DNA of 63,196 bases, counting the filler, from Perkinsus chesapeaki ATCC PRA-425 (lineage: Eukaryota > Protista > Perkinsozoa): NCBI GenBank assembly GCA_013115145.1. It is 6 parts of 6 records of this genome, joined end to end, with 100 filler letters (N's around TTAATTAATTAA, not from the genome) between each part and the next. Parts side by side here need not be neighbours in the genome. Positions count along the whole stretch, not along the records: positions 7,892 to 27,835 come from JAAPAO010000630.1; 5 more parts are not named here. The stretch is one strand, 5' to 3'. Numbering within the stretch: the stretch's first letter is position 1; every line of letters starts with the position of its first letter. Below, one piece after another: positions 7,892 to 20,156 of the stretch. The notes below the pieces were generated by a model, which was not told the DNA's origin, ran no database searches, and saw only the letters and a program-made list of their open reading frames with translations. The position numbers and the translations under genes are program-made.

Positions 7892-9528
7892 TTAACGGCT
7901 ATACAGTGTCTGAGTCCCGCAACGCGTCATCCCTAGGATTGACCCATCGTCGGACTCCCGACCACGTCTGCAATGTCTTGCCAAACAATGCTATGAAAAC
8001 ACTCACCAGCGATCCTGAAGATGAGATGTGTGAGAAAGGGCTTGACGCTGGAATCTGGAGAAGCCGTCTCTGAACTGCTGGAACCAAGTCAGCAAATATA
8101 CGGAAGAGTTCCACCGGAGCACCACATCTCTCGGTATAACTTTAAACCGTTTCTGACCGTTGTACTCCTCGTTAATACAGTCCACCAGAAGCTGGTGGGC
8201 GATATTAGATTGTCGCAAGAGTTGGGCATGGGATCGCAGCTTGACTAGTAACTTGCCAACGCTCTTGGCCGAGCGGTTCGCAGCAGTGTCCACACCATCA
8301 GCCCATGAATTGTCTTGGTCGCCTTCGAGGTCGAAGTCTTCCGAAGTCTCACTCTCAGTGGCGCTATCCTCATATATAAAAGAGTCATCTTCTCTAATGA
8401 CGTCCCCGAGATCGCATTGAGCGGCTGTGCTACTGTCAGCCTCAGCCACGGATCCTCCCGGCTCGGTATTCTGCCATCCTTGCAACACGTCGTCGACGAG
8501 ACTTTCAGTTGACCAGAGTCCCAGGGAGTTCACGACACAACAAGCGGAGCTTATGTCCGGCACGACCAAGATTCATGAATGGGGCCTGAAGCTTCTCGTA
8601 TAGAATATCCATGGCACGGAAGTTAGAGCTCGCGCTGTCGGTTGTGAAGCTGCGGACCTTCTCAGCACAACCGAGTACTTCTAACGAGCCGCTGACATTC
8701 TCGGCAATATTGGCACCAGTGTGACGGTCTTTCAGGTCGATGAAGTCCAGCGGAATCCTTCTCAAGCTAAAGTCGGATTCGGAGTAGTAGTGGCCAACGA
8801 TAACAATGAAGAAGCTTCTCGAGTTGCGAGACCAGATATTGATTGTTATGCCTATGTCCTGGACATCAGCCAACGTAACTACGAAAAATAATTAGCGAGG
8901 CAGTTGTAGAGGCAATAATCTACCGGCAGTTGTCGCTGGATAAGCCTCGATTCTTCTTCTCGCGACCGACTGTTCGCCTAGATGGCATGGCGAAAGACGG
9001 GCATAAGGCTTGCACAAATGAACGGAACCATTTGCTGTCCACTGTTGCTAAAGGAAGCCCACAATTTATAATGAGATCTGTAACCGTCGACAGAGAGCAT
9101 TGCTTGAGCTCTTCTTCATCAAATCGCTGGGGGATAGAGCTAAGCTCTTCTTCTTGTCGAGCTTTGCAGACCAATTCGTGTCCCCGAACGCCAGTAAGGC
9201 TGCCTCGGCTCATCTTGATAACTTTCGTGCAGCGGGGACATTCAGGTTCATTGTCCCTCACTTTTCTCCGCGTTGGAAACTCAGTCTCGAGCTTCAGTTT
9301 CTTACGGGGGAACATTTGTGTAACTTGAAGACGTGAATGTACTGAGCTGATGTCTCCCGCAATTTCAATCACTTAACCACTCAACACGCATTTGGTGCGC
9401 GTCCCACATCGTGAGAGTCATACACGCGTATCGGCATCCGTACGGTTCCCGCAAAAAACGGTGCGGTTGCGGTTCGTAATCCGTACATAGTACGGTACGG
9501 AGCCGTACCGTAAAGCTGCCCATCCCGA
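7892..9528 (-). mobile_element. hAT-superfamily DNA transposon, degenerate, 3' part cut by the scaffold end
   Basis: BED-like finger CPRC..H..C. LIINCGLPLATVDSKWFRSFVQALCPSFAMPSRRTV, ITINIWS, HTGANIA, FTTDSASSN and DVVLRWNSS are hAT transposase motifs. Candidate terminus TCGGGATGGGCA at 9528-9517 has clustered CCGTAC/GTACGG/AAACGG subterminal motifs. There are frameshifts near 8965 and 8560. Confidence 0.9.
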
Positions 9529-9653: not shown

Positions 9654-12623
9654 TCATTCTGCGTAAAGCCCGAGCGTGGTCGACTGGTGGTCAGCATCCT
9701 CACGCGAAACTTTCATCAATGATGATATTAAGTTCCGGAGAGAAGCCGGTGCATGATGTCTGTAGCCGGGATTGGGTTGATCAACTGAATAGCAGTACCT
9801 GAGCAACGATACGCGATTCAAAAGAATCTACCGCATATTGACGTCCTTTTTACAGCAAGGAATCTGCCGTAGCTCGAAGGTTGGTCATGAAGCTGGCAGA
9901 CATTATGGCTCCAGCGACTGCACTCATAATGGACAAGAAAACAGGAGACGGGACCTGAGACCTGTATTACGATCGCCGCAAAGGCAGGTTTGGAGAACTT
10001 GCAGAGAATAACATGTCGAGTTCACCGACGAAGTGCTTCGTAATGAAGCCTCTCTAGTTTAAAGAAGCGGGAAAGTACGATTTCCAATTAACAGACGCCG
10101 AAATTAGACAACGGGTCCGAGCGGTTGAGGAGGCGGACTAGGAATGAGGTCCGCCCGAGCTAGTTCGAATTCAGCCGCTGTAGTCATCTGTCAAGTAAAA
10201 GTACATCATCAGCGGCACTTGGCGATGCCATCACACTGAGCGGATCGCTTGAGGCGACTTGTAGCACTCACAAATGCTTTATTGGAAGTATCCATCATAT
10301 CCTCACGGCACGTTATTATCATATGCGTCACATGGCCGCTGAAGGCTGTGGCGATGGCAACTCCCACTAGTTGAAATATCTGCCTCTACGACTTCCCTCT
10401 AAGCCTTGAAAGGTAGGCTGCTCACCACTATGGTTTTGGGGAGGGAACTAATAGCAGACGGGTCAGCGTGGAGAACTTTATATGCATTTGTTCCGGCAGA
10501 AAGGAAAGGACTAGAATTGAAAGCTACGCTGATGTACCTAGGATCCAGGCAAGGTGACGTCGAGCTGACCAGGTGCATCTGCTCACGCATCTTCGCGGAG
10601 AAATCTGATAATCTTCCGGTGAGTTGTGAGACAGCAGGTTAGCCCTTTGGCGAGGACAGTGCTCATGGTACTGGTCGGCGTATCCAACGATGTGTCGATT
10701 AAGTCTAATACTAAGCGGAGTGGACGCAGGAACATAGTCAAGAGCGATCCCAGGATGATCGTCCCTGTGTGATAAACCAATCCGTTTACCAGACCGTGAT
10801 AGGTGGTGAACCAGGGAGCCTGAGGAAAATTGCTGCCATATACAGTAGAGAATGAATTACTGCATTAGTTTCAAGTCTATTCAGGAAGTCAGTCTAATAG
10901 ACATACAATGGATTTCATAATTGACGCTTAGTGGCTGCCACGAGGTTGGTTCACCTGTCTTTCCCCGGAGAGGTCTCTTGTAGCAAAATAGTAAAGTATA
11001 GTGGAGTAGCTGGTGGTGAAGTAGGACAGTGCTGAAAGGCATTCCCACACCAACCAGATGCCAAATAACCAATACACCATCATCCATCTAATCACATCCA
11101 GACATCAAAAGATATCCTTCATAATGAGCAGAATGGTGCGTACATTTCTTTATCGGAATAAGCAAAGTTTCTGTGTACCCCAGCAATCTCATGGTCGTCT
11201 ATAACAGCCTTTTCCCCAGTTATCGACCCAGCAGATATGAGATACATGAAACCGTATCCAAGCATCTAGAACAGCGGACCAGCAACAACCACGGCGACCA
11301 GCTTCCTACTGCGATCGCTGTCACCTTTATTGCGATATCAAGCAGCGGGTACAGTGCCAAGGCGGGTAGGTCTAGCATGACCGCACCTAGTAAAAGTTGG
11401 AGGCAGACCAATATGAGATCCGTTACATGCCTCCTTTACATAAGCCGAACCTAGCCTTATGCTCGACTGTGCTTTACACGCTATGATCATGAACGTGATG
11501 GCCACGGCAAATGACAGCACACCAACTATTCGAGTTAATATCATCTGAAACGATGTGCTGCGCGACGTGGCCGGTGACAATACGAGGCTACAATGTCCGA
11601 CTGGGCCACGTCAACAAATAGGGTCGCGATGGGAGACACTTCCACAGTAGGACGAGTGTAGCATGAGGCACCGAAGGTGAGGAAGGCCACCGCTGATGCG
11701 GCCAGAGAGACATTGGCCACCGCCTGATGCAGGTATTCGCAACTGAGCCAACATCATCCCCACAAACCATAGCATTGTTCTTAAGGAGAATTATATACGA
11801 AAAACTCGCCACCAGAGCAACGAGCAGACCTGTCAAGAAGATCGGTGATCCATGCCATAGACTTTCTACCAGTTATGATGGCCTTGGAGGCATTACCCAG
11901 CTCTGCTGCGTAGAATAACATTTGCTGTGCTTGGCTCGATATAGGTCCGCGCATGATCTATTATCGGAACATAGGACTAGCTCGGAGGCCCATAGTCCCA
12001 CCTGCTTGGCGAGGAAGGTGCTATTAGGCAGGCAATAGCGACCGGCAACGGATATAGTGGGTATGCCTGGTTGAGGTACTATCTCCTGCGTCAACACAGT
12101 GGCCTTCTTGTCATAAGGCGCATCACCGTTGCTAACGGTATCGACCATTGCTGGCATCGGGCACGGGAGATCCCCTAATGGATCTTTCTCAGTGGGGCAG
12201 CGCTCCACACAGATAGGATTGGCGAAGTTCATAGCGACTGGGGTGTGGGACATGTCCTCGATCCCTGCGCACCAATAGAGGAAGGGCTTCTCGAGGACCG
12301 ATGCATCGGCGCCGCACAACTCCCCTGAGATCATCTCAATCGAACAATCTACTTAAATGATGATACCCTTGTAGTTGAAACCATGAGTAATACGCCTGAG
12401 ATCCCCGTGGGAAGCAGCATACTGCCATATTATACCGAGGCCGCCAAGGAAGACCAGACCGAGGATAACAAAGGCCACATCAGTGCATCTGAGACAAGCT
12501 TCTTTGATGGGCGTGATATGGGAGATGATGCACAGACCTTCTGTTCTTCATGCCGGCTTGGCGTTCCATATCGCCGATGAATCCATGTGATGCTGGCGGC
12601 GAGCTTTCGGTGGGCAATAACAT
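9654..12623 (-). CDS. Choline transporter-like protein (CTL/SLC44 family), multi-exon
   Basis: Spliced N-terminus KNRR|CTDVAFVILGLVFLGG..GDLRRITHGFNYK|GELCG..KPFLYWC..ICVERCP..RYCLP. Also YHTGTIILGSLL..LRLVL, YISVAFNSSPFLSAGTNAYKVL, and C-terminal YCYSVD..HAPASLRNL. ATG at 12623, stop TGA at 9654-9656. Confidence 0.9.
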
Positions 12624-12737
12624 AGGACAACTTCTTTACGACTGGTAGACCCTCCTCGCTTCCTGCTCATGATAACGAGGATTGTACGGGCAACTATTCG
12701 ACCAACTCAAGCCGATTATGCCGATGAGGCATGAAAC

Positions 12738-15700
12738 TCAGTATAGTATCTTCTTGCAGTTAACCGAGCCACACTCGCATTTCATGGTCTTCCCGGCAAC
12801 CAACCCAACTCGGTACCCATAGTCATACCTGCAGCCACGAAATACACCATATACGACAGTATGGCGAGTAAACATACACAAGCTCCTCGCCCGGCTCGAT
12901 GTCTTTCTCAGCAAAGAACGCTATCCGGGGCAATCGATAGTCGTGGGTGTCCACCAAGACCAACTGTCGTGCTAAGTTCGGAGAGCAGCTATGGTTAATA
13001 AATCTACCTGAACATTGAGCGTCTCATAGTAGCCGAGGATCTGCTGCCTGACCGACGTTGCCCAAGAAATGGGCGTCCAGAGTGAATTCAGAGTTTCTGT
13101 CAGTGGTCTCTGGTGGGCCAGCTGGGGGCGCCGCGATCATGCAGTCTCCTTCGGTGGATTGCCGATATTGTTCTGCGTCCATCGACGACGCTTCGTTCCT
13201 CGACAGTCTCGCTCCTCCTGCCCCCACATTCCATCTAAGGACGCTTCAGTTGCGCGGCGGCTCACCGACTCCAGCCACTTACGTTTGTCCTACGCCATAA
13301 CGGGAGAGATCGAAGAAGTAGCCATCGCTGTACTTCTGTCCCCTCACCTCGGTAACGGCTTCCGATAGAAGCTCACCAGCGTACTCGCAAATGAAGGCTC
13401 CGGCCTAACAGCGATGACATGTAGCTGCAATAGGCGAATGAATTAGGCTCACTTCGATGGGCTCGAGGCATCTGACACCCCAACCTCGATCGGGACCGGT
13501 CCTAGAAGTGGCAATGGAAAGCAGCGAGGCTTCAAGCTACTCACCAGAAAACTTCCAGACATTTAGTGATGCCCTTTTGGACAACTCGCAATGGACATGT
13601 GTTATAGTCACAGGCACACAGGAAGTTGCATTCCACAACACAGTCCATAGTAGCCTTGAGGTAACCTGATAGGGAAGTAATTTGACGGAAATACGGTATG
13701 AAATGGCGACCTTTCCTGTTGTAGGCGCCCCAGCTGCAAAGGGATGTCTTGCCACAGTCTGAATCGCCGCCCACAGTGACTTGACTTCTTTTACTCCATT
13801 CAATATCGCGTAACTCCTTTTCCTTCGCTGACGGCTCACGATGACACCTGTGTCGAAAATCCACTCCACTATGACACACCACTAGCTTACCTGTCCCCTC
13901 GACAACCAACACATGCTCCCACACTCCGTATAGGGATCACACTCCCCAGCAGGGACCTTCCAGCCACTGTGGAGTCGATGTAGGTGAACTGCGGCATCAC
14001 CACGCGGCTTAGAGCTTCCTCCTGGTATCACCATATGTACTTGATTCTAGTCTATCGTACTACTTCAGTCTCGTCCAAGAAGACCTGGTCCACTACCAAC
14101 GGTATTGGAATGCGTTCGCGCCCTAAACTCGGTTCAGATCGGTGCACTAGAGCGCGTCTTGCCTTTGGTGATATCCTCTTTAATTGTCAGCTTCGTAAGC
14201 TCTTTGACTGGCCGCTCAGGTAGGCAGACAGAGATCGATCGACCATCCAGCAGGACGTCCTGATGAGAGCCCTAGCCAGCCAATGACCACGCTACCGCCA
14301 CGTACGCCTTCGTCCTTGACGCTTGCTGCAGCTCCAGGACGGCGTATCCTATCTGCAGGTATCTCTTCGTTCCACAGTCCGTGGGCCTTCCGGTATCGGC
14401 AATAACAAGTCTCGGGGAAGACTTCAATAACCGTAGCGTCGCGCCATTGCCGGGCAGCAAATACCTCCACTGATCTGAAATGTCTTACCGAAATAGATCA
14501 CACCAACCTCACCCGCCATTCCTCAGCCACACCGGCCATTCCGAGTGCTGCCGCGGGGGCATTGTCGGATGGACCTCATGCACCGTAGCATCAGCTTCCT
14601 CAATCGCTGCCTTCACTGGAAGTGCCTTCAAAGTCAGATAGGCAACAAGAGCCTCCAGTTGTTTCTGACCAAGCATGGAATTCGAACCCTGATGAGCTCG
14701 TTACCTCGCGTATTAGCCTCAGCAAAGGCGCCTCCCTGCCACCAGCAACACCTTCTTCCTCCTGGCAATCTGGACAGTACCACTTATCATCACTCTCCGT
14801 CAAATGACGCCAATGCTCCTCACCGAGCCATCGCGTGAGGCATAATCTGAACCGATGTGTCAGATCCAATTCTATCAGCCCCGGCAATGTGCATTTTGGC
14901 ATCTGGTAGAGTAATTAGAGATAATTCTGCGGCCTACAGATGTTTACAGAGATTTCCGAGCAGCCGCCGAGTTGCTGCTGGCGGAATTGGAAGACCGTTC
15001 ACAGAAGAAGGATGCAGCTGGCGGAATTGGAAGACCGTTCACAGAAGAAGGATTGCCTTGCTTGGTGCTACCTGCATATGGCCTTAACACAATCCTCACA
15101 CTGCAGTATCTCCCCTCCCTCTCCACACAGTCTACAGTATATCTGAAAGGATGGAGCAAGCTACGCTCTCCTTCCCACTAACGAACCACAGGCCATTCGA
15201 AAAAGACAGTATTGAAACCCCAGTAAAATCCGGACCGTTGTTTGCCCGCGCACTAACAGTGCAATAATTGGAGTTGGAATGGAGAAGCAAGGGTTACGAG
15301 CTTAAATTCACCAACGCCGTAGAGCTATCATCGAGACGCTGTTCCTGACGCGAGCTACTATTTTCCCATTAAGCATCCCCGCGAGTCGTCATCCCCAATC
15401 AACTCCGAAAAAGCGGATAATAGTGGATTCAAGCCTCTCCGTTGGAGCCAATCTTAATATAAGAGGTATCTTCTTAAGGCTAACGTATCTCTCCCAACAG
15501 TAGCCTGATATATGAGATCTAGCGAGATGCTCCAACCTCCCTTAGCGTGCTCTCCGAAAAGACAGAAGAGTTGGGTGGTGCTCTGTTACTTCCTTGACAA
15601 ACCAATAGCCCCCAAATTATCACTTCCTTCTGATCATCGTCCCTCTCCCAGCCAGTATCAATGAGCTTTCTTTGCCATTGCCCCTCGGATGCTGCTGCCT

Positions 15701-16390
15701 TAACCTTCTGTGTCAACATGCTGCCGTCAGGGTCCAAGTACTCTAGACACCTCACACATGTGCCAATATCATCAAATAAAGGATGCTCATGCAGCCGGGC
15801 TGATGACGATGACAAAAATACATTCGAAAATACATTTGCAACTTTGCAAATGTTCCTCCCCGAAGTTCCTTGGCGCAACAAGACCCTCTGTATCCCCGAA
15901 CAGCACACGTCATTCCAAGGAGGAGTTACTAGTCACAATGACTAGCTATGAAGCCCCTGAGTCTCTCGGCGATAGACGTCCCTTCCCGTCACAGCCCGTC
16001 AGCCTTTATTCAACTCACCCACTTCGCATCCACATCCACTACAGGGTAGCATCGATAGCAGGCACTCCGTGGTTAGCAACTCACGGAGCTTCCTCTGTGT
16101 CTCTGACCTGAACAACAACCCGTTGAATACGAATACTGGTAATCACTCCCAACCGCTTATGCCCAGAGATCGCTACCTCGGTCGGTCCTGAATGTGCCCA
16201 TGAAGGCTGCTAGGTCGATGAACCTCCCCGGGATTCTGAGCCTGACACTCAGGGCCCTCTCGGGCACCTCAGCGGCTATCACTGGCCTTACCTTATCTGA
16301 TGACCTTACTGTACAAGATAATCGATTCACTGGTGTCGATGACATATTCTTCGTGCTGCTGCTGTTGCTGTGGGGGGAAGTGTCGGCCAT
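12738..16390 (-). CDS. Histone-lysine methyltransferase, SUV39/SETDB1/G9a (H3K9) type, with N-terminal ATRX-like ADD domain and a Tudor/chromo-barrel-like module
   Basis: Post-[16 protein letters not shown] (stop 12738-12740). SET motifs [11 protein letters not shown]|[21 protein letters not shown]|[11 protein letters not shown] and EEL|..YDYG. Pre-SET EDITK|[32 protein letters not shown]. Tudor-like [34 protein letters not shown] elements [18 protein letters not shown] and [22 protein letters not shown]|[18 protein letters not shown]. Start codon approximate. Confidence 0.88.
14974..15053. repeat. 40-bp tandem duplication inside the intron (14847-15071) that splits the ADD PHD finger
   Basis: gctgctggcggaattggaagaccgttcacagaagaaggat occurs twice with one mismatch. 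Confidence 0.9.
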
Positions 16391-16813
16391 TTATTGGCAA
16401 AGGGAACCCCTGACCCAGTCGATACGTCCTTGATGATGTTGCTTTATCAGGCTGTATGATATGAGGGCCTACCAGGTCTGGCTAGCTACCTATTATATAG
16501 GCGTCTTACGCAGCAGTCTTGGAATATGCGAATGTACTCCCCCACACACTGCCTGACAAGGTGAACTAATTTCAGGAAAGTCCGCTCGATTTGTCATCTG
16601 TGACCGCTAAAGTGTACATTCTCCATTGTGAGTTGAGAAAGCAGGCACCCGAAGTTGCAAAGGGAGGCTGGCAGAGTTCACGACCTGTGGACTCGGGGAG
16701 CCGGTGAGCCATCGACGATGGTAGCTTGTCCGTGCATGTTCAACATTTCTCCCACATAATCTCAACTCAACACCATAAAAGGATTCACATTCTTCGTCTC
16801 CTCCACATGACAG

Positions 16814-19800
16814 CTATGTTCTAAATGATGTTTCCTCCCCTCCTGACTTATACTCACTAACATCGTCCATAGTTCTCGCCAAGGTCTGCAATGCCGACAG
16901 TCCGCCATGTAACTGTAATGATACAAAGGTCACCACACCCAAGATTCCACTGCCACAGCCGGCTACGTCAATTCTGCCTATGTCCCTCTGCAGCGCCTCC
17001 AGCCTCTTCAACTTCTCCCCTTGAACCTCCGTAATCTTCTTATAGGTGTTTGCCTCCTCGGTCAAGCGTCTTATCTCTCTTCCGTAGCCCTCCCTAACAT
17101 TTTCCAACTCCTTTTCCAGCCTCCCCTTCTCCTTCCGCAGACCGTCAGCATCACCAGCGGTCCGCTTCAGCCTGTCAAAACCAATCACCGATACCAAAGC
17201 GCCTCCTTGACAAGGAGGTACAAGGAGTCCTTGTACGGAGAAAACGGTTTAGCACTCAAACGGCAGTTCTGCAGTGGTGGACTACTCCACGGTGCTGCTA
17301 GGCAAAGACTAACGATCGGACACACCGAAGCGTTTCCTCATGAGCTTCATCCATCAACTGCTGTGCCTCCATGCTTCGCCTCTTTAGCCGGTCGTTCTCC
17401 TGTGCCAGCCGCTCCAACTGGGAGGTCTTCATCAGGTCCAAATCGGCCCTCAAACGGCATAGCTGACTCCGGAGCCAATCGCCACCCAGTGGTATGCCAC
17501 CACCCACTACCTCCTCCCTGGACTTCGCTGCCTCTTCCTGTCGCTCAGTCAGCATGACTCTGGCCTCATGCAGCTCACGCTTAAGAGTCTCCACTTGAAC
17601 CTGTTGCCTAATAAATCCCCTACGATGCGCTATGGCCCACGCAATCTATATCTTCCCTCATCTTAAGGAGTAGCTGTTCCATCTCCTGTCTAAGCGTTTT
17701 CAGCTCCTTCTCAGCTACTCGCCTATTAGCCAACTCTCGATCACCTCTTGCCACTTGCTCCGCCTGACTGCAACAACTAAGTCAATGACGGTCATGACTG
17801 CATAAGGGAGATTCTCAGACTAAACTCCCTCAAGAGGCGAGCTACTTTGGACAATTTCCCAACCATGCTTCGTCGCAAAGGAGACATTATTTACCCGCCA
17901 ACTAGAGTGCGCCGATGAATCCAATTCCCTATGTTAATTCAACTAAGTCACCCATCACCCATTCTTCACCGCTGTAGTTGAGCCCCAATTGAGGACAACC
18001 ACGACGATGAGGGTCTGAACCACCGCCGACGGTAAAATCAACTTCCTGCCTCCCAACTGCCGGGCCGTATGATGATAACATAATATACAATAAATTATAA
18101 TCCAACTTGTTATATTATACCATATATCTTACATCTATAATAATCATCAATTTCAATATAACAATCCAGCACCCCAGTGTGATGATCCCGAGACCACCTT
18201 CTCAGCTTCACTTCGTTCTAATTCCTTCCTACACTCCGCCAGCTTCACCGTCACCACCGGCAGTTGCTTCGTCTCTCCCCTCAGCTTCTCGCACTCCTTC
18301 TGGAGGACCACCATTTCTCTAATCCACCAGTTCCCTGACACGCATCTCTGCCGTAGCCCTTCCTACCGTTCAACATGAGCTAATCTTTCCTCTGCTGCAG
18401 CCCTCCCTTCTTTCACTTTTTCGTATTCTTCCCTCAACCCTTCACACTCCTCTGTGAGCTCTCTCGTCCGACGCTCCAAAGTTGTCTCGTCATGCCGTAT
18501 TATGTCTCGAGCTGCTACCTGCATCATGCACTCCTTGACTCAGATGAGCTCCATTTAAATAGGTACTATGGAGTTGAAAACCTAACTACCACACCCCACC
18601 TCTTCAAGAAGTACCGCTAGTTTTGAATGTCCCCAAACTGGCTAAAATGGTTACGTACAATTCAGCGTGTAACACTGGTGACAAATCAGTCAAAGGAGAC
18701 ATAAACCTCTACTCGCCCTCCTCCTACTCGTCGTCGAGCGGAGTATATATCTACTCCCCGAAGCCAGCCGCCCAGCCAGCTTCATACACTAATAGACCAA
18801 ACCGGTCATGTGCTTGACCGACTCATACATGCACATTGTTCTAGGTTCCTAGTGGCCGTATTAGCCCAACGTTTATCGACTTTCTATCGTATTACTACAC
18901 GCGTTTCCATTATTCTTAACGCCTTATCCCGCTCCTCCATTATAACCTTTAATGATGCCATCTCAGCCGACATTCTGAACACTGCCACTGAAGACTCTAC
19001 TGGCGCTCAGCCCGACCCCACTTGTGTAGCTTTTCGTCTCCTTGCTCTATAATGTCCCTGAGGCGTCTCTCAGCATAGACCCTTTCCGCCCATATTTTAT
19101 CAGTTTCCTCATCAGCCATCTTCAACTGTCGCTTAATGCATTCAACTTCCTTGTTTGCCCTCTCCAGCCTCGCCTCCGCCTCCATATTCCCCCTGGCAGC
19201 GGCCATCTCACCTACCACAACGACAACAACAAACAATAACAACAACAACAACAATAATAACCGCCCTACAACAGAAATTTAAACCATGTAGATCGACGCA
19301 CCGCAAACTAATAGGCGAGAGGAAAATCGTTCGAGATTTGCCATTTGGAAGGGCACTGCGAAAATCCAAGCAGAAGATGGCGATGTATTCTCGAACCCGT
19401 CACGTAGGCGCAAGTAAGCGAGCGACAGCAGCAGCAGCAGTAACGATGATGCTGTGGTGTAACTATCAGCCATGGCTCGCACCACTATAGCACCATGTTG
19501 TTGATCTAATGCTTCCATGACTGACATACTGAATCAGTATAACACCATACTCTACACTCAGCACACTCATAACACAGCTCTCGCGCCACACCTACTCTCT
19601 CGCCTATCTTCCTCCATTCCTCTCCGCAGCTCCTCTATCTCCTTTCCCTTATCAGCCAGTGCCCTCCTCAATTCCTTCACTTCATGCTTAATTGCCTCCC
19701 TTGGAGTGCCACCAGCTGGAGACGCTCTGCCATTGCTTTGCCGTTCTCCTTCGGCAGCGTCTGCCTTCTTAACCAGCAATGAATTCTCTATAGAAAGCAG

Positions 19801-20156
19801 CTGAACCTGTTGCTGCCCGCTGCCTCAACACATAATTCATCATCAACTCACCTGCTTCCGTAAACTCTCGATCAGTACAGATTCCCCTTCCACCAGCCGA
19901 GGCTTGGCGTCTGGCGTCTGTTGAATAGACTGGCGAATCATAGTCAACACTACTCGAGTGGCATAGCCCTACTCCTTCTGCAATGTACATTGACAACGCA
20001 AAGGCATTGTGATGATTAGTAGCACTGATCTTAGCCTAAAAGCTCTCTCGCTAGGCCTGGTTGGCTCATAGCATGACGAAAGAAATACCAAAGTAATACT
20101 GCCGGAGATACCGCTCTTCTCCTCTTTGGCGGCGGGGAGCCTTGCCGACCCCTCAT
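16814..20156 (-). CDS. Long coiled-coil protein of unknown family, multi-exon
   Basis: Successive E/K/R/L-rich heptad exons (LKRELHEARVMLTERQEE, EARLERANKEVECIKRQL, IKHEVKELRRALADKGKEIEELRR). Candidate ATG at 20156 (MRGRQGSPPPKRRR, NLS-like). 3' end approximate. Confidence 0.7.

What the first reader, a model, noticed from the sequence alone, without database searches (positions are those of the whole stretch)
12738..16390. ADD-Tudor-SET fusion: a self-contained H3K9 read-write enzyme
Seen after splicing: an ATRX-like ADD module (CSGC..HEHPLF..CVRC, then [37 protein letters not shown], closely matching ATRX CRWCAEGG..CKKCILRNLG..WYCYIC). It is followed by a Tudor/chromo-barrel-like module and preSET-SET-postSET of the SUV39/SETDB1/G9a type. 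Established: ADD domains are known from ATRX and DNMT3/3L, and ATRX ADD reads unmethylated H3K4 plus H3K9me3. SUV39-type enzymes usually use a chromodomain, SRA, ankyrin repeats or Tudor/MBD instead. Inference: an alternative heterochromatin-spreading feedback loop, notable in a lineage close to dinoflagellates, which have largely abandoned nucleosomal packaging. I do not know of a described ADD-SET fusion but cannot exclude one.
Basis: partly seen in the sequence, partly recalled or inferred. Interest (0 to 1): 0.82.

Follow-up and report, generated by a model that had tools for sequence, protein, structure and literature searches.

The report
ADD-reader fused to H3K9-type methyltransferase
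A Perkinsus-type parasite carries one 17-exon gene that joins an ATRX-like histone-tail reading module to a SUV39-class histone methyltransferase.

Summary
On the minus strand, 16390..12738, seventeen exons splice into one open frame of 640 aa. Sixteen introns are GT-AG or GC-AG, and twelve of them are only 38-49 nt.

The domain order is a C2C2 finger plus atypical PHD (an ADD-like module), a Tudor-like stretch, then pre-SET, SET with an insert, and post-SET.

- **One gene:** from the second PHD exon to the stop, exons lie at most 49 nt apart. P. marinus has the same exons in the same order. An unrelated environmental contig (L003) encodes finger, PHD, pre-SET and SET in one uninterrupted ORF.
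- **ADD, not generic PHD:** the spliced PHD's three best solved-structure matches are ATRX ADD (E 2.7e-7, gapless). The whole module aligns to the ADD of P0030, which passes Pfam ADD_ATRX and matches ATRX ADD at 1.7e-26. Pfam itself does not recognise the window's own module.
- **Tudor:** weakly supported only.
- **Function:** H3K9 read-write activity is inferred, not shown. No RNA data cover the gene.
- **Novelty:** ADD_ATRX plus Pre-SET plus SET proteins already sit unnamed in public collections, so the architecture is on record. I found no paper on it.

Verdict: new variant of a known kind, moderate interest.

The parts
16305..16390 (-). Exon 1: ATG and the first 28 codons. Its junction to exon 2 is the least certain in the model.
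   Evidence: In-frame GT-AG join. Weak similarity to the P. marinus N-terminus.
16019..16107 (-). Exon 2: first Cys pair (CSGC) of the GATA-like finger of the ADD module.
   Evidence: A blastn block of 74% identity to P. marinus stops at the exon edges.
15705..15799 (-). Exon 3: HEHPLF motif, second Cys pair (CVRC) of the finger, and the linker.
   Evidence: It aligns with the fingers of P0030 and ATRX.
15072..15142 (-). Exon 4: first half of the PHD-like finger.
   Evidence: Pfam PHD E 0.02 on this exon alone. 82% nucleotide identity to P. marinus.
14705..14846 (-). Exon 5: second half of the PHD-like finger (Cys in place of the canonical His; WYCPDC) and the start of the C-terminal helix.
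   Evidence: The spliced PHD (exons 4+5) matches ATRX ADD best: E 2.7e-7, gapless over 53 aa.
14513..14664 (-). Exon 6: helix and linker, then the start of the Tudor-like module (EWPVW).
   Evidence: 49% identity to the P. marinus exon. The E-WP motif is shared with L004 and L005.
14306..14474 (-). Exon 7: core of the Tudor-like module.
   Evidence: Conserved R-W-D...F...Y..Y columns with L002, L004 and L005. Nine of the ten nearest named Atlas clusters are Tudor-clan, with scores under 0.9. No Pfam or PDB match.
14163..14259 (-). Exon 8: linker up to EDITKG. It ends at a GC donor.
   Evidence: A GC-AG intron of 40 nt restores the family spacing (EDxxxG-xER-PIP) seen in P. marinus, L002 and L003.
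14064..14122 (-). Exon 9: N-terminal pre-SET segment ([12 protein letters not shown]).
13891..14021 (-). Exon 10: pre-SET (FTYI motif and the first two Cys).
   Evidence: 62% identity to P. marinus.
13711..13847 (-). Exon 11: pre-SET Cys 3 to 5, with a family-specific insert.
   Evidence: About 77% identity to P. olseni KAF4707387.1. The blastn block to P. marinus coincides with the exon.
13545..13665 (-). Exon 12: second pre-SET Cys cluster and the start of SET.
   Evidence: Matches Clr4 pre-SET in PDB, E 0.004. Pfam Pre-SET E 0.0021.
13453..13501 (-). Exon 13: GWGVR cofactor-binding motif.
13283..13404 (-). Exon 14: N-terminal SET.
   Evidence: 68% identity to P. marinus.
13053..13234 (-). 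Exon 15: insert of about 57 aa within SET, then the segment before NHSC.
   Evidence: Relatives carry inserts at the same site.
12878..13007 (-). Exon 16: RFINHSC motif and C-terminal SET.
   Evidence: Pfam SET E 4.5e-10 on this exon alone.
12738..12828 (-). Exon 17: YDYGY catalytic motif, post-SET CxCx4C, and the stop codon.
   Evidence: 50% identity to the C-terminus of P0030.

Best explanation
This is one protein-coding gene of a Perkinsus-type alveolate, with 17 exons and 640 aa. Its product joins two parts.

The first is an ATRX-type ADD module: a GATA-like C2C2 finger, an atypical all-Cys PHD finger and a helix, followed by a small Tudor-like module. The second is a complete SUV39-class catalytic core: pre-SET zinc cluster, SET with an insert, and post-SET.

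Shown here: the architecture, its conservation, and intact catalytic motifs.

Inferred: the SET methylates histone H3 lysine 9, as every characterised member of this class does. The ADD docks the enzyme on H3 tails with unmethylated K4, as all characterised ADDs do, possibly together with K9me3 as in ATRX. Writing would then be confined to, or spread along, chromatin that is not marked as active. The enzyme itself would do part of the job that HP1 plus SUV39 do elsewhere.
For: **Single gene**
- All 16 junctions keep the frame, with GT-AG or GC-AG ends.
- From the second PHD exon to the stop, the exons are separated by only 38-49 nt.
- Nucleotide conservation against P. marinus is confined to the exons.
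- P. marinus has the ADD and pre-SET/SET exons collinear on one strand.
- L003 encodes finger, PHD, pre-SET, SET and post-SET in one uninterrupted ORF. It aligns collinearly with the spliced product, E 1e-51.
- L004 and L005 carry finger, PHD, Tudor-like and SET in the same order.

**ADD**
- All 12 zinc-ligand Cys are present, with ATRX spacing.
- The best solved-structure matches of the spliced PHD are the three ATRX ADD sequences, E 2.7e-7; the next is CHD4 at 8e-5.
- The whole module aligns to the ADDs of P0030 and P0029 at 62 and 53 bits, covering both finger and PHD.
- P0029 and P0030 pass the Pfam ADD_ATRX cut-off. P0030 matches ATRX ADD at 1.7e-26 over its full length.

**SET class**
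- Pfam finds SET and Pre-SET.
- The NHSC, YDY and CxCx4C motifs are intact.
- The top 26 solved-structure matches of the close relative P0004 are all SUV39-class chains; 25 are H3K9 enzymes and one is SETMAR.
- The spliced product scores 140 bits against an EHMT and 129 against a SUV39H2-like protein.

**Context:** no HP1 homologue was found in P. marinus (PMC4751559).
Against: - No RNA evidence: the two small RNA runs of this species do not cover the gene.
- Pfam does not recognise the window's own finger at all. It scores the PHD below every cut-off, with B-box and generic PHD ahead of the DNMT3 ADD PHD model.
- Language-model neighbours of the relative's (L003's) N-terminal module are generic PHD clusters.
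- AlphaFold2 gave no usable model of a relative's ADD: pLDDT 44.
- The Tudor-like fold is unconfirmed.
- Of the two tyrosines that follow the finger in ATRX, only one position holds Tyr here. I recall, but did not check in a paper, that these tyrosines line the K9me3 pocket. K9me3 reading therefore cannot be read off the sequence.
- Substrate and reader specificities are untested.
Confidence: 0.75

Rival explanations
1. Same gene and same domains, but the ADD works as a K4me0-gated switch rather than a K9me3 reader. As in DNMT3A, it would hold the catalytic domain inactive until it binds an H3 tail that is unmethylated at K4. The enzyme would then start K9 methylation wherever K4 is unmarked, instead of copying existing K9me3.
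For: K4me0 binding is the property common to ATRX and DNMT3-type ADDs (established knowledge; ATRX review). The family profile also matches the DNMT3A, 3B and 3L ADDs. The residues behind the finger are only partly ATRX-like.
Against: The window's PHD is closer to ATRX than to DNMT3. Nothing here bears on autoinhibition.
Confidence: 0.3
2. The N-terminal module is a generic PHD finger with an unrelated neighbouring zinc knuckle. The resemblance to ADD is superficial and its ligand is unpredictable.
For: Pfam finds no family for the finger, and the PHD scores below all cut-offs. Atlas neighbours of the relative's (L003's) N-terminal module are generic PHD clusters. The family profile scores CHD4 PHDs as high as ATRX.
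Against: The three top PDB matches of the window's PHD are all ATRX ADD, gapless, with Cys replacing the canonical His. Finger and PHD align together to an ADD that passes the Pfam cut-off and matches ATRX at 1.7e-26. The HP-hydrophobic...CxxC finger is kept in all five lineages found.
Confidence: 0.12
3. The catalytic domain methylates another lysine or a non-histone protein. The reader modules would then serve a different targeting purpose.
For: The family forms its own unresolved branch outside the EHMT and SUV39 clades. It has an unusual pre-SET insert and a SET insert.
Against: All nearest characterised relatives are H3K9 enzymes, and H3K36 enzymes score far lower. Pre-SET and post-SET are complete.
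Confidence: 0.12
4. ADD exons and SET exons belong to two neighbouring genes, or the model is a splicing artefact.
For: There is no transcript evidence. Public Perkinsus models are only fragments.
Against: Gaps of 38-49 nt between exons 5 and 17 leave no room for a gene boundary. A relative has the same arrangement in a single ORF, and four other lineages share the order.
Confidence: 0.04

Closest known systems
ATRX ADD domain (solved structures 2JM1, 2LBM, 3QL9)
   Same: GATA-like C2C2 finger, then a 16-20 residue linker, then a PHD with Cys in place of His, then a helix. The window's PHD aligns without gaps over 53 aa. ATRX ADD binds H3K4me0 and H3K9me3.
   Different: In ATRX the ADD sits on a SNF2 remodeller, not on a methyltransferase. 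The window's finger is too diverged for Pfam. The K9me3-pocket residues are only partly kept.
Unnamed ADD_ATRX + Pre-SET + SET proteins P0029 and P0030 (environmental contigs, a genome assembly GCA_014466275.1, one EukProt entry)
   Same: Same order: ADD, pre-SET, SET with insert, post-SET. 33% identity over the ADD and 37-50% over SET. An AU test does not reject one clade with the window's protein, p 0.36.
   Different: They have a 370-430 aa N-terminal extension and no Tudor-like module. Their pre-SET is canonical and they have no introns. Their ADD passes Pfam.
SETDB1 (ESET)
   Same: Tudor-type module upstream of pre-SET, a SET domain split by an insert, and post-SET. One member of the P0029 cluster is auto-named SETDB1.
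   Different: SETDB1 has three Tudor domains and an MBD, and no ADD. Here only about 37 aa separate the Tudor-like module from pre-SET, which is too short for an MBD. The SET insert is about 57 aa rather than several hundred.
SUV39H1 / Clr4 and G9a / GLP
   Same: SUV39-class catalytic core with a built-in reader of the enzyme's own product (chromodomain or ankyrin repeats), the basis of read-write spreading. Best solved matches of the family's SET.
   Different: The protein falls outside the EHMT and SUV39 clades in the tree.
DNMT3A / DNMT3B / DNMT3L ADD
   Same: Same finger-plus-PHD module fused to a chromatin-writing enzyme. The EHPLF motif of the finger is shared with DNMT3A (recalled from memory, so a lead only). 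Weak profile matches.
   Different: The writer there is a DNA methyltransferase. The window's PHD is closer to ATRX.

Membership tests
ADD domain (ATRX-DNMT3-DNMT3L) | GATA-like C2C2 zinc finger directly upstream of the PHD finger | tested here: met
   CSGC...CVRC lies 16 residues before the PHD. It aligns with the fingers of P0030 and, through it, ATRX. It is conserved in P. marinus, L003 and L005.
ADD domain (ATRX-DNMT3-DNMT3L) | Atypical PHD with eight Cys ligands (Cys where canonical PHDs have His) | tested here: met
   Gapless alignment to ATRX ADD, E 2.7e-7. All Cys columns are shared, and these are the top three PDB matches.
ADD domain (ATRX-DNMT3-DNMT3L) | Recognition by curated ADD profiles (Pfam ADD_ATRX, ADD_DNMT3, DNMT3 ADD PHD) above their cut-offs | tested here: inconclusive
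   Window finger: no family. Window PHD: 12.3 bits against a cut-off of 27. L003 finger: ADD_DNMT3 at 0.006 and ADD_ATRX at 0.037 are the two best hits but lie below cut-off. The homologous ADDs of P0029 and P0030 pass ADD_ATRX, and the window's module aligns to them at 53-62 bits.
ADD domain (ATRX-DNMT3-DNMT3L) | Finger, PHD and C-terminal helix pack into one globular fold | tested here: inconclusive
   The AlphaFold2 model of the L003 module with an 8-row alignment had pLDDT 44. The window's own module has no contiguous reference to fold.
ADD domain (ATRX-DNMT3-DNMT3L) | Binds the H3 tail unmethylated at K4 (ATRX: also K9me3) | not testable with these tools
   Needs peptide binding assays.
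SUV39-class SET methyltransferases (KMT1) | SET domain with NHSC and catalytic Tyr motifs | tested here: met
   Pfam SET E 4.5e-10 on exon 16 alone. GWGVR, RFINHSC and YDYGY are present.
SUV39-class SET methyltransferases (KMT1) | Pre-SET nine-Cys zinc cluster | tested here: met
   Five plus four Cys are present, with a family-specific insert of about 33 aa between Cys 3 and 4. Pfam Pre-SET scores 0.0021 on part of it and is above cut-off in relatives P0008, P0029 and P0030. Clr4 is the best PDB match.
SUV39-class SET methyltransferases (KMT1) | Post-SET CxCx4C | tested here: met
   CECGSVNC sits at the C-terminus.
SUV39-class SET methyltransferases (KMT1) | Methylates H3K9 | not testable with these tools
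   Inferred from the nearest characterised relatives.
Tudor / royal family | Five-stranded beta-barrel recognised by profile or fold comparison | tested here: inconclusive
   No Pfam or PDB sequence match. Atlas neighbours are Tudor-clan, but with scores of 0.81-0.88. The AlphaFold2 model of L005's module had pLDDT 64 with four strands, and Foldseek found nothing below E 0.9.
SETDB1 orthologues | Methyl-CpG-binding domain between Tudor and pre-SET | tested here: not met
   Only about 37 residues lie between the Tudor-like module and pre-SET. No MBD hit appeared in the exons scanned, nor in the relatives P0004 and P0006, which carry the Tudor-like module, or P0008.

The most novel reading that the evidence does not exclude
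ADD-SET enzymes form an old family, spread across several protist lineages, of self-targeting H3K9 methyltransferases. In perkinsids, where no HP1 has been found, the ADD (with the Tudor-like module) would read K4me0/K9me3 on the enzyme itself. That would carry heterochromatin maintenance without the HP1-SUV39 loop.
Probability: 0.2. Interest if true: 0.75.

Novelty: new variant of a known kind. Interest (0 to 1): 0.5.

Why it matters
Reader-writer coupling is how heterochromatin copies itself. The known couplings use chromodomains, ankyrin repeats, SRA or Tudor/MBD modules.

An ADD on an H3K9-type enzyme would be a further solution. It would tie K9 methylation directly to the K4 state of the same tail.

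It occurs in a lineage next to dinoflagellates in which no HP1 homologue was found (PMC4751559). A broad survey assigned the Pfam ADD_DNMT3 class to bilaterians and cnidarians only (10.1101/2021.11.30.470311). Diverged ADDs like this one escape such Pfam-based surveys.

The public Perkinsus gene models for this locus are fragments, so the architecture is invisible in current proteomes.

Tried and rejected
- **Pfam on single exons** was too short for anything except SET, Pre-SET and PHD hints.
- **HMMER over 1.84 billion representatives** with the 100-aa pre-SET exon gave only five hits and no full-length Perkinsus protein.
- **Word-based search with the L003 ADD region** found only itself.
- **MAFFT alignment of exon fragments to L003** scattered the short pieces. 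A trimmed version (A3) was used instead.
- **AlphaFold2** on the L003 ADD failed (pLDDT 44). On the Tudor-like module it gave pLDDT 64, but Foldseek against PDB found nothing.
- **Atlas features** for the ADD pointed only to generic PHD clusters.
- **The finger half alone** has no PDB or Pfam match.
- **RNA runs** of the species are tiny and do not cover the gene.
- **The SET tree** leaves the window's protein in a polytomy.
- **A 25-nt GT-AG intron 8 and a 157-nt intron 10** were rejected in favour of homology-supported junctions.
- **Pfam on neighbouring ORFs** found nothing.

A point of method: the spliced product has no reference. 
Full report
**What is in the sequence**

Translating the minus strand of 12500-16600 shows a string of short open segments. 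Joining them at GT-AG sites gave a first continuous frame from the ATG at 16390 to the stop ending at 12738.

Homology then corrected three junctions:
- The pre-SET exon starts 114 nt further upstream, so intron 10 is 43 nt. This adds the Cys residues needed for a nine-Cys cluster.
- A stop-free 45-nt GT-AG intron lies inside the pre-SET exon. The P. olseni protein lacks those 15 residues, and P. marinus has an intron at the same place.
- Intron 8 is best read as a 40-nt GC-AG intron. This restores the spacing seen in all relatives.

The final model has 17 exons and 640 aa. Four introns of 197-562 nt lie in the ADD region, and twelve of 38-49 nt lie downstream.

Contigs from two independent DNA studies match the stretch with no substitution or indel. 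They break only at a 40-nt tandem duplication inside intron 4.

**Whose genome**

The only close matches among 1.84 billion representative proteins were two fragments:
- P0003, a 122-aa partial model from Perkinsus marinus assembly GCA_000006405.1.
- P0001, which is KAF4707387.1, 'ehmt2, partial', from Perkinsus olseni.

Identity is 54-79% to P. marinus exons and about 77% to P. olseni. The window therefore comes from another perkinsid. No full-length protein of this gene is in the collections searched.

**One gene or two**

Four observations point to one gene.
1. Exons 5 to 17, from the second half of the PHD finger to the stop codon, are separated by 38-49 nt each. Every junction keeps the frame, and there is no room for a gene boundary.
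2. Nucleotide similarity to the P. marinus locus occurs only in blocks that coincide with the modelled exons. The P. marinus contig carries the ADD exons, exon 6, and the pre-SET and SET-N exons in the same order and strand. Two runs of N hide the place of the Tudor-like exon and the SET C-terminus there.
3. An environmental contig, L003, holds finger, PHD, pre-SET, SET and post-SET in a single uninterrupted ORF of 783 aa. The upstream ATG is at position 130, ahead of the called start. The window's spliced product aligns to it collinearly from the finger to beyond SET-N (E 1e-51) and again over the C-terminus.
4. Contigs L004 and L005/L002 carry finger, PHD, Tudor-like module and pre-SET/SET in the same order.

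Direct transcript evidence is missing. The two RNA runs of the species are about 4 Mb each and hold nothing of this stretch.

**Is the N-terminal module an ADD?**

Direct profile tests are weak. Pfam finds nothing for the window's finger. It scores the spliced PHD below every cut-off: B-box 0.0007, PHD 0.0027, DNMT3 ADD PHD 0.19. Atlas features of the relative's (L003's) N-terminal module point to generic PHD clusters.

Three results speak for ADD.
1. The spliced PHD, searched against all solved-structure sequences, has the three ATRX ADD sequences as its best matches: E 2.7e-7, 33.5 bits, gapless over 53 residues. The match includes the Cys that replaces the canonical His and the LG motif. 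CHD4 follows at 8e-5.
2. A C2C2 finger with an HP-hydrophobic motif before its second CxxC lies 16 residues upstream. P. marinus, L003 and L005 also have it; in L004 only the second half was identified. For L003's finger the two best Pfam hits are ADD_DNMT3 (0.006) and ADD_ATRX (0.037), both below cut-off.
3. The last homologue search found P0029 (919 aa) and P0030 (894 aa). Their Pfam record and my own scan show ADD_ATRX above its cut-off, plus Pre-SET and SET. P0030's ADD matches ATRX ADD at E 1.7e-26 over finger, PHD and helix, followed by DNMT3B, 3A and 3L. The window's module aligns to these ADDs over both finger and PHD in one alignment: 33% identity and 61.6 bits to P0030, 53.1 bits to P0029.

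I therefore accept it as a diverged ATRX-type ADD by sequence homology. Its fold and ligand remain untested, because AlphaFold2 on L003's module gave pLDDT 44.

**The Tudor-like module**

Residues 202-258 span the exon 6/7 junction. They share a conserved pattern with the corresponding stretch of L002, L004 and L005.

Nine of the ten nearest named Atlas clusters are Tudor-clan families, but the scores are 0.81-0.88, which counts only as a lead. Pfam and solved-structure sequences give nothing. An AlphaFold2 model of L005's module had pLDDT 64 with four strands, and Foldseek found no match.

L003, P0029 and P0030 lack this module. 'Tudor-like' is a reasonable label, not a finding.

**The catalytic part**

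Pfam SET scores 4.5e-10 on one exon, and Pre-SET is seen on part of another. GWGVR, RFINHSC, YDYGY and the post-SET CxCx4C are intact.

The pre-SET exon matches Clr4 best. The top 26 solved-structure matches of the relative P0004 are all SUV39-class chains: GLP, G9a, SUVH6, SUV39H2, Clr4, SUVH4, SETMAR and DIM-5, all H3K9 enzymes except SETMAR. H3K36 enzymes score far lower. The spliced product scores 140 bits against an EHMT and 129 against a SUV39H2-like protein.

Two features are unusual: a 33-aa insert between pre-SET Cys 3 and 4, and a 57-aa insert in SET, at the site where relatives carry longer inserts.

In a quick maximum-likelihood tree the window's protein falls outside the EHMT and SUV39 clades. 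It sits in a polytomy with the L003/P0004/P0006 group, P0029/P0030, SUVH and SUVR. An AU test does not reject a single clade of the six ADD-bearing proteins (p 0.36). That does not prove one origin.

**Mechanism**

- **Shown:** a reader-type module and a complete SUV39-class core sit in one polypeptide, and this is conserved across several lineages.
- **Inferred from the families:** the SET methylates H3K9. The ADD binds the H3 N-terminal tail with K4 unmethylated, which is common to ATRX and DNMT3 ADDs. It may also bind K9me3, as ATRX does.

Two modes are possible: product-guided spreading, or K4me0-gated initiation as in DNMT3A. The sequence does not decide between them. Only one of the two tyrosine positions after the ATRX finger holds Tyr here. 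That these tyrosines line the K9me3 pocket is my recollection, not something I checked in a paper.

Marinov and Lynch found no HP1 homologue in P. marinus (PMC4751559). That makes a built-in reader attractive, but this is context, not evidence.

**Novelty**

I found no paper describing an ADD-SET fusion. A large survey places the Pfam ADD_DNMT3 class in bilaterians and cnidarians only.

However, P0029 and P0030 already carry ADD_ATRX, Pre-SET and SET hits in the precomputed Pfam records. They occur on many environmental contigs, in one genome assembly and in one EukProt entry, as 'hypothetical protein'; one fragment is auto-named SETDB1. So the architecture is on record but undescribed.

What is new here is the perkinsid version: a diverged ADD that Pfam misses, an added Tudor-like module, and a gene that public Perkinsus annotations hold only as fragments.

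Verdict: a real feature, a new variant of a known kind, of moderate interest.

Noticed in passing
window 14973-15053 (inside intron 4): A 40-nt unit is duplicated in tandem at 97% identity. Short-read contigs of both DNA studies break exactly here, with doubled word depth.
   Followed up: partly
window 14123-14162: Intron 8 appears to use a GC donor (GC-AG, 40 nt). The GT-AG alternative would be only 25 nt and would add five residues that every relative lacks.
   Followed up: partly
L001 7855-7954 and 10719-10818 (P. marinus GG684817.1): Two 100-N assembly gaps fall where the Tudor-like exon and the C-terminal SET exons should be. This explains why the public P. marinus model is a 122-aa fragment. 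The P. olseni models (KAF4707387.1 and KAF4707388.1) are also partial and are named ehmt2.
   Followed up: partly
P0004 residues 433-476; L003 product residues about 160-205: Relatives carry a LysM-like stretch after SET (P0004: Pfam LysM E 0.0016, just below cut-off) or between ADD and pre-SET (L003, by eye only). LysM is an odd partner for a chromatin enzyme.
   Followed up: no
L010 and L011-L013 (contigs encoding P0030 and P0029): The clear ADD_ATRX-SET genes have no introns. They are flanked by a Strumpellin gene on the opposite strand, in compact genomes of unnamed eukaryotes that recur in several marine metagenomes. Their first 370-430 residues match no Pfam family.
   Followed up: no
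window 8003-9372, minus strand: Three overlapping or adjacent ORFs of 122-188 aa look by eye like pieces of a transposase-type gene (a Cys/His-rich start and an RWNS motif). Pfam found nothing at E 0.01.
   Followed up: partly
window 16900-19900: GC skew stays strongly negative (-0.29 to -0.41) over 3 kb upstream of the gene. The region includes coiled-coil-like minus-strand ORFs at 16814-17594 and a short ACA triplet repeat at 19217-19254.
   Followed up: no
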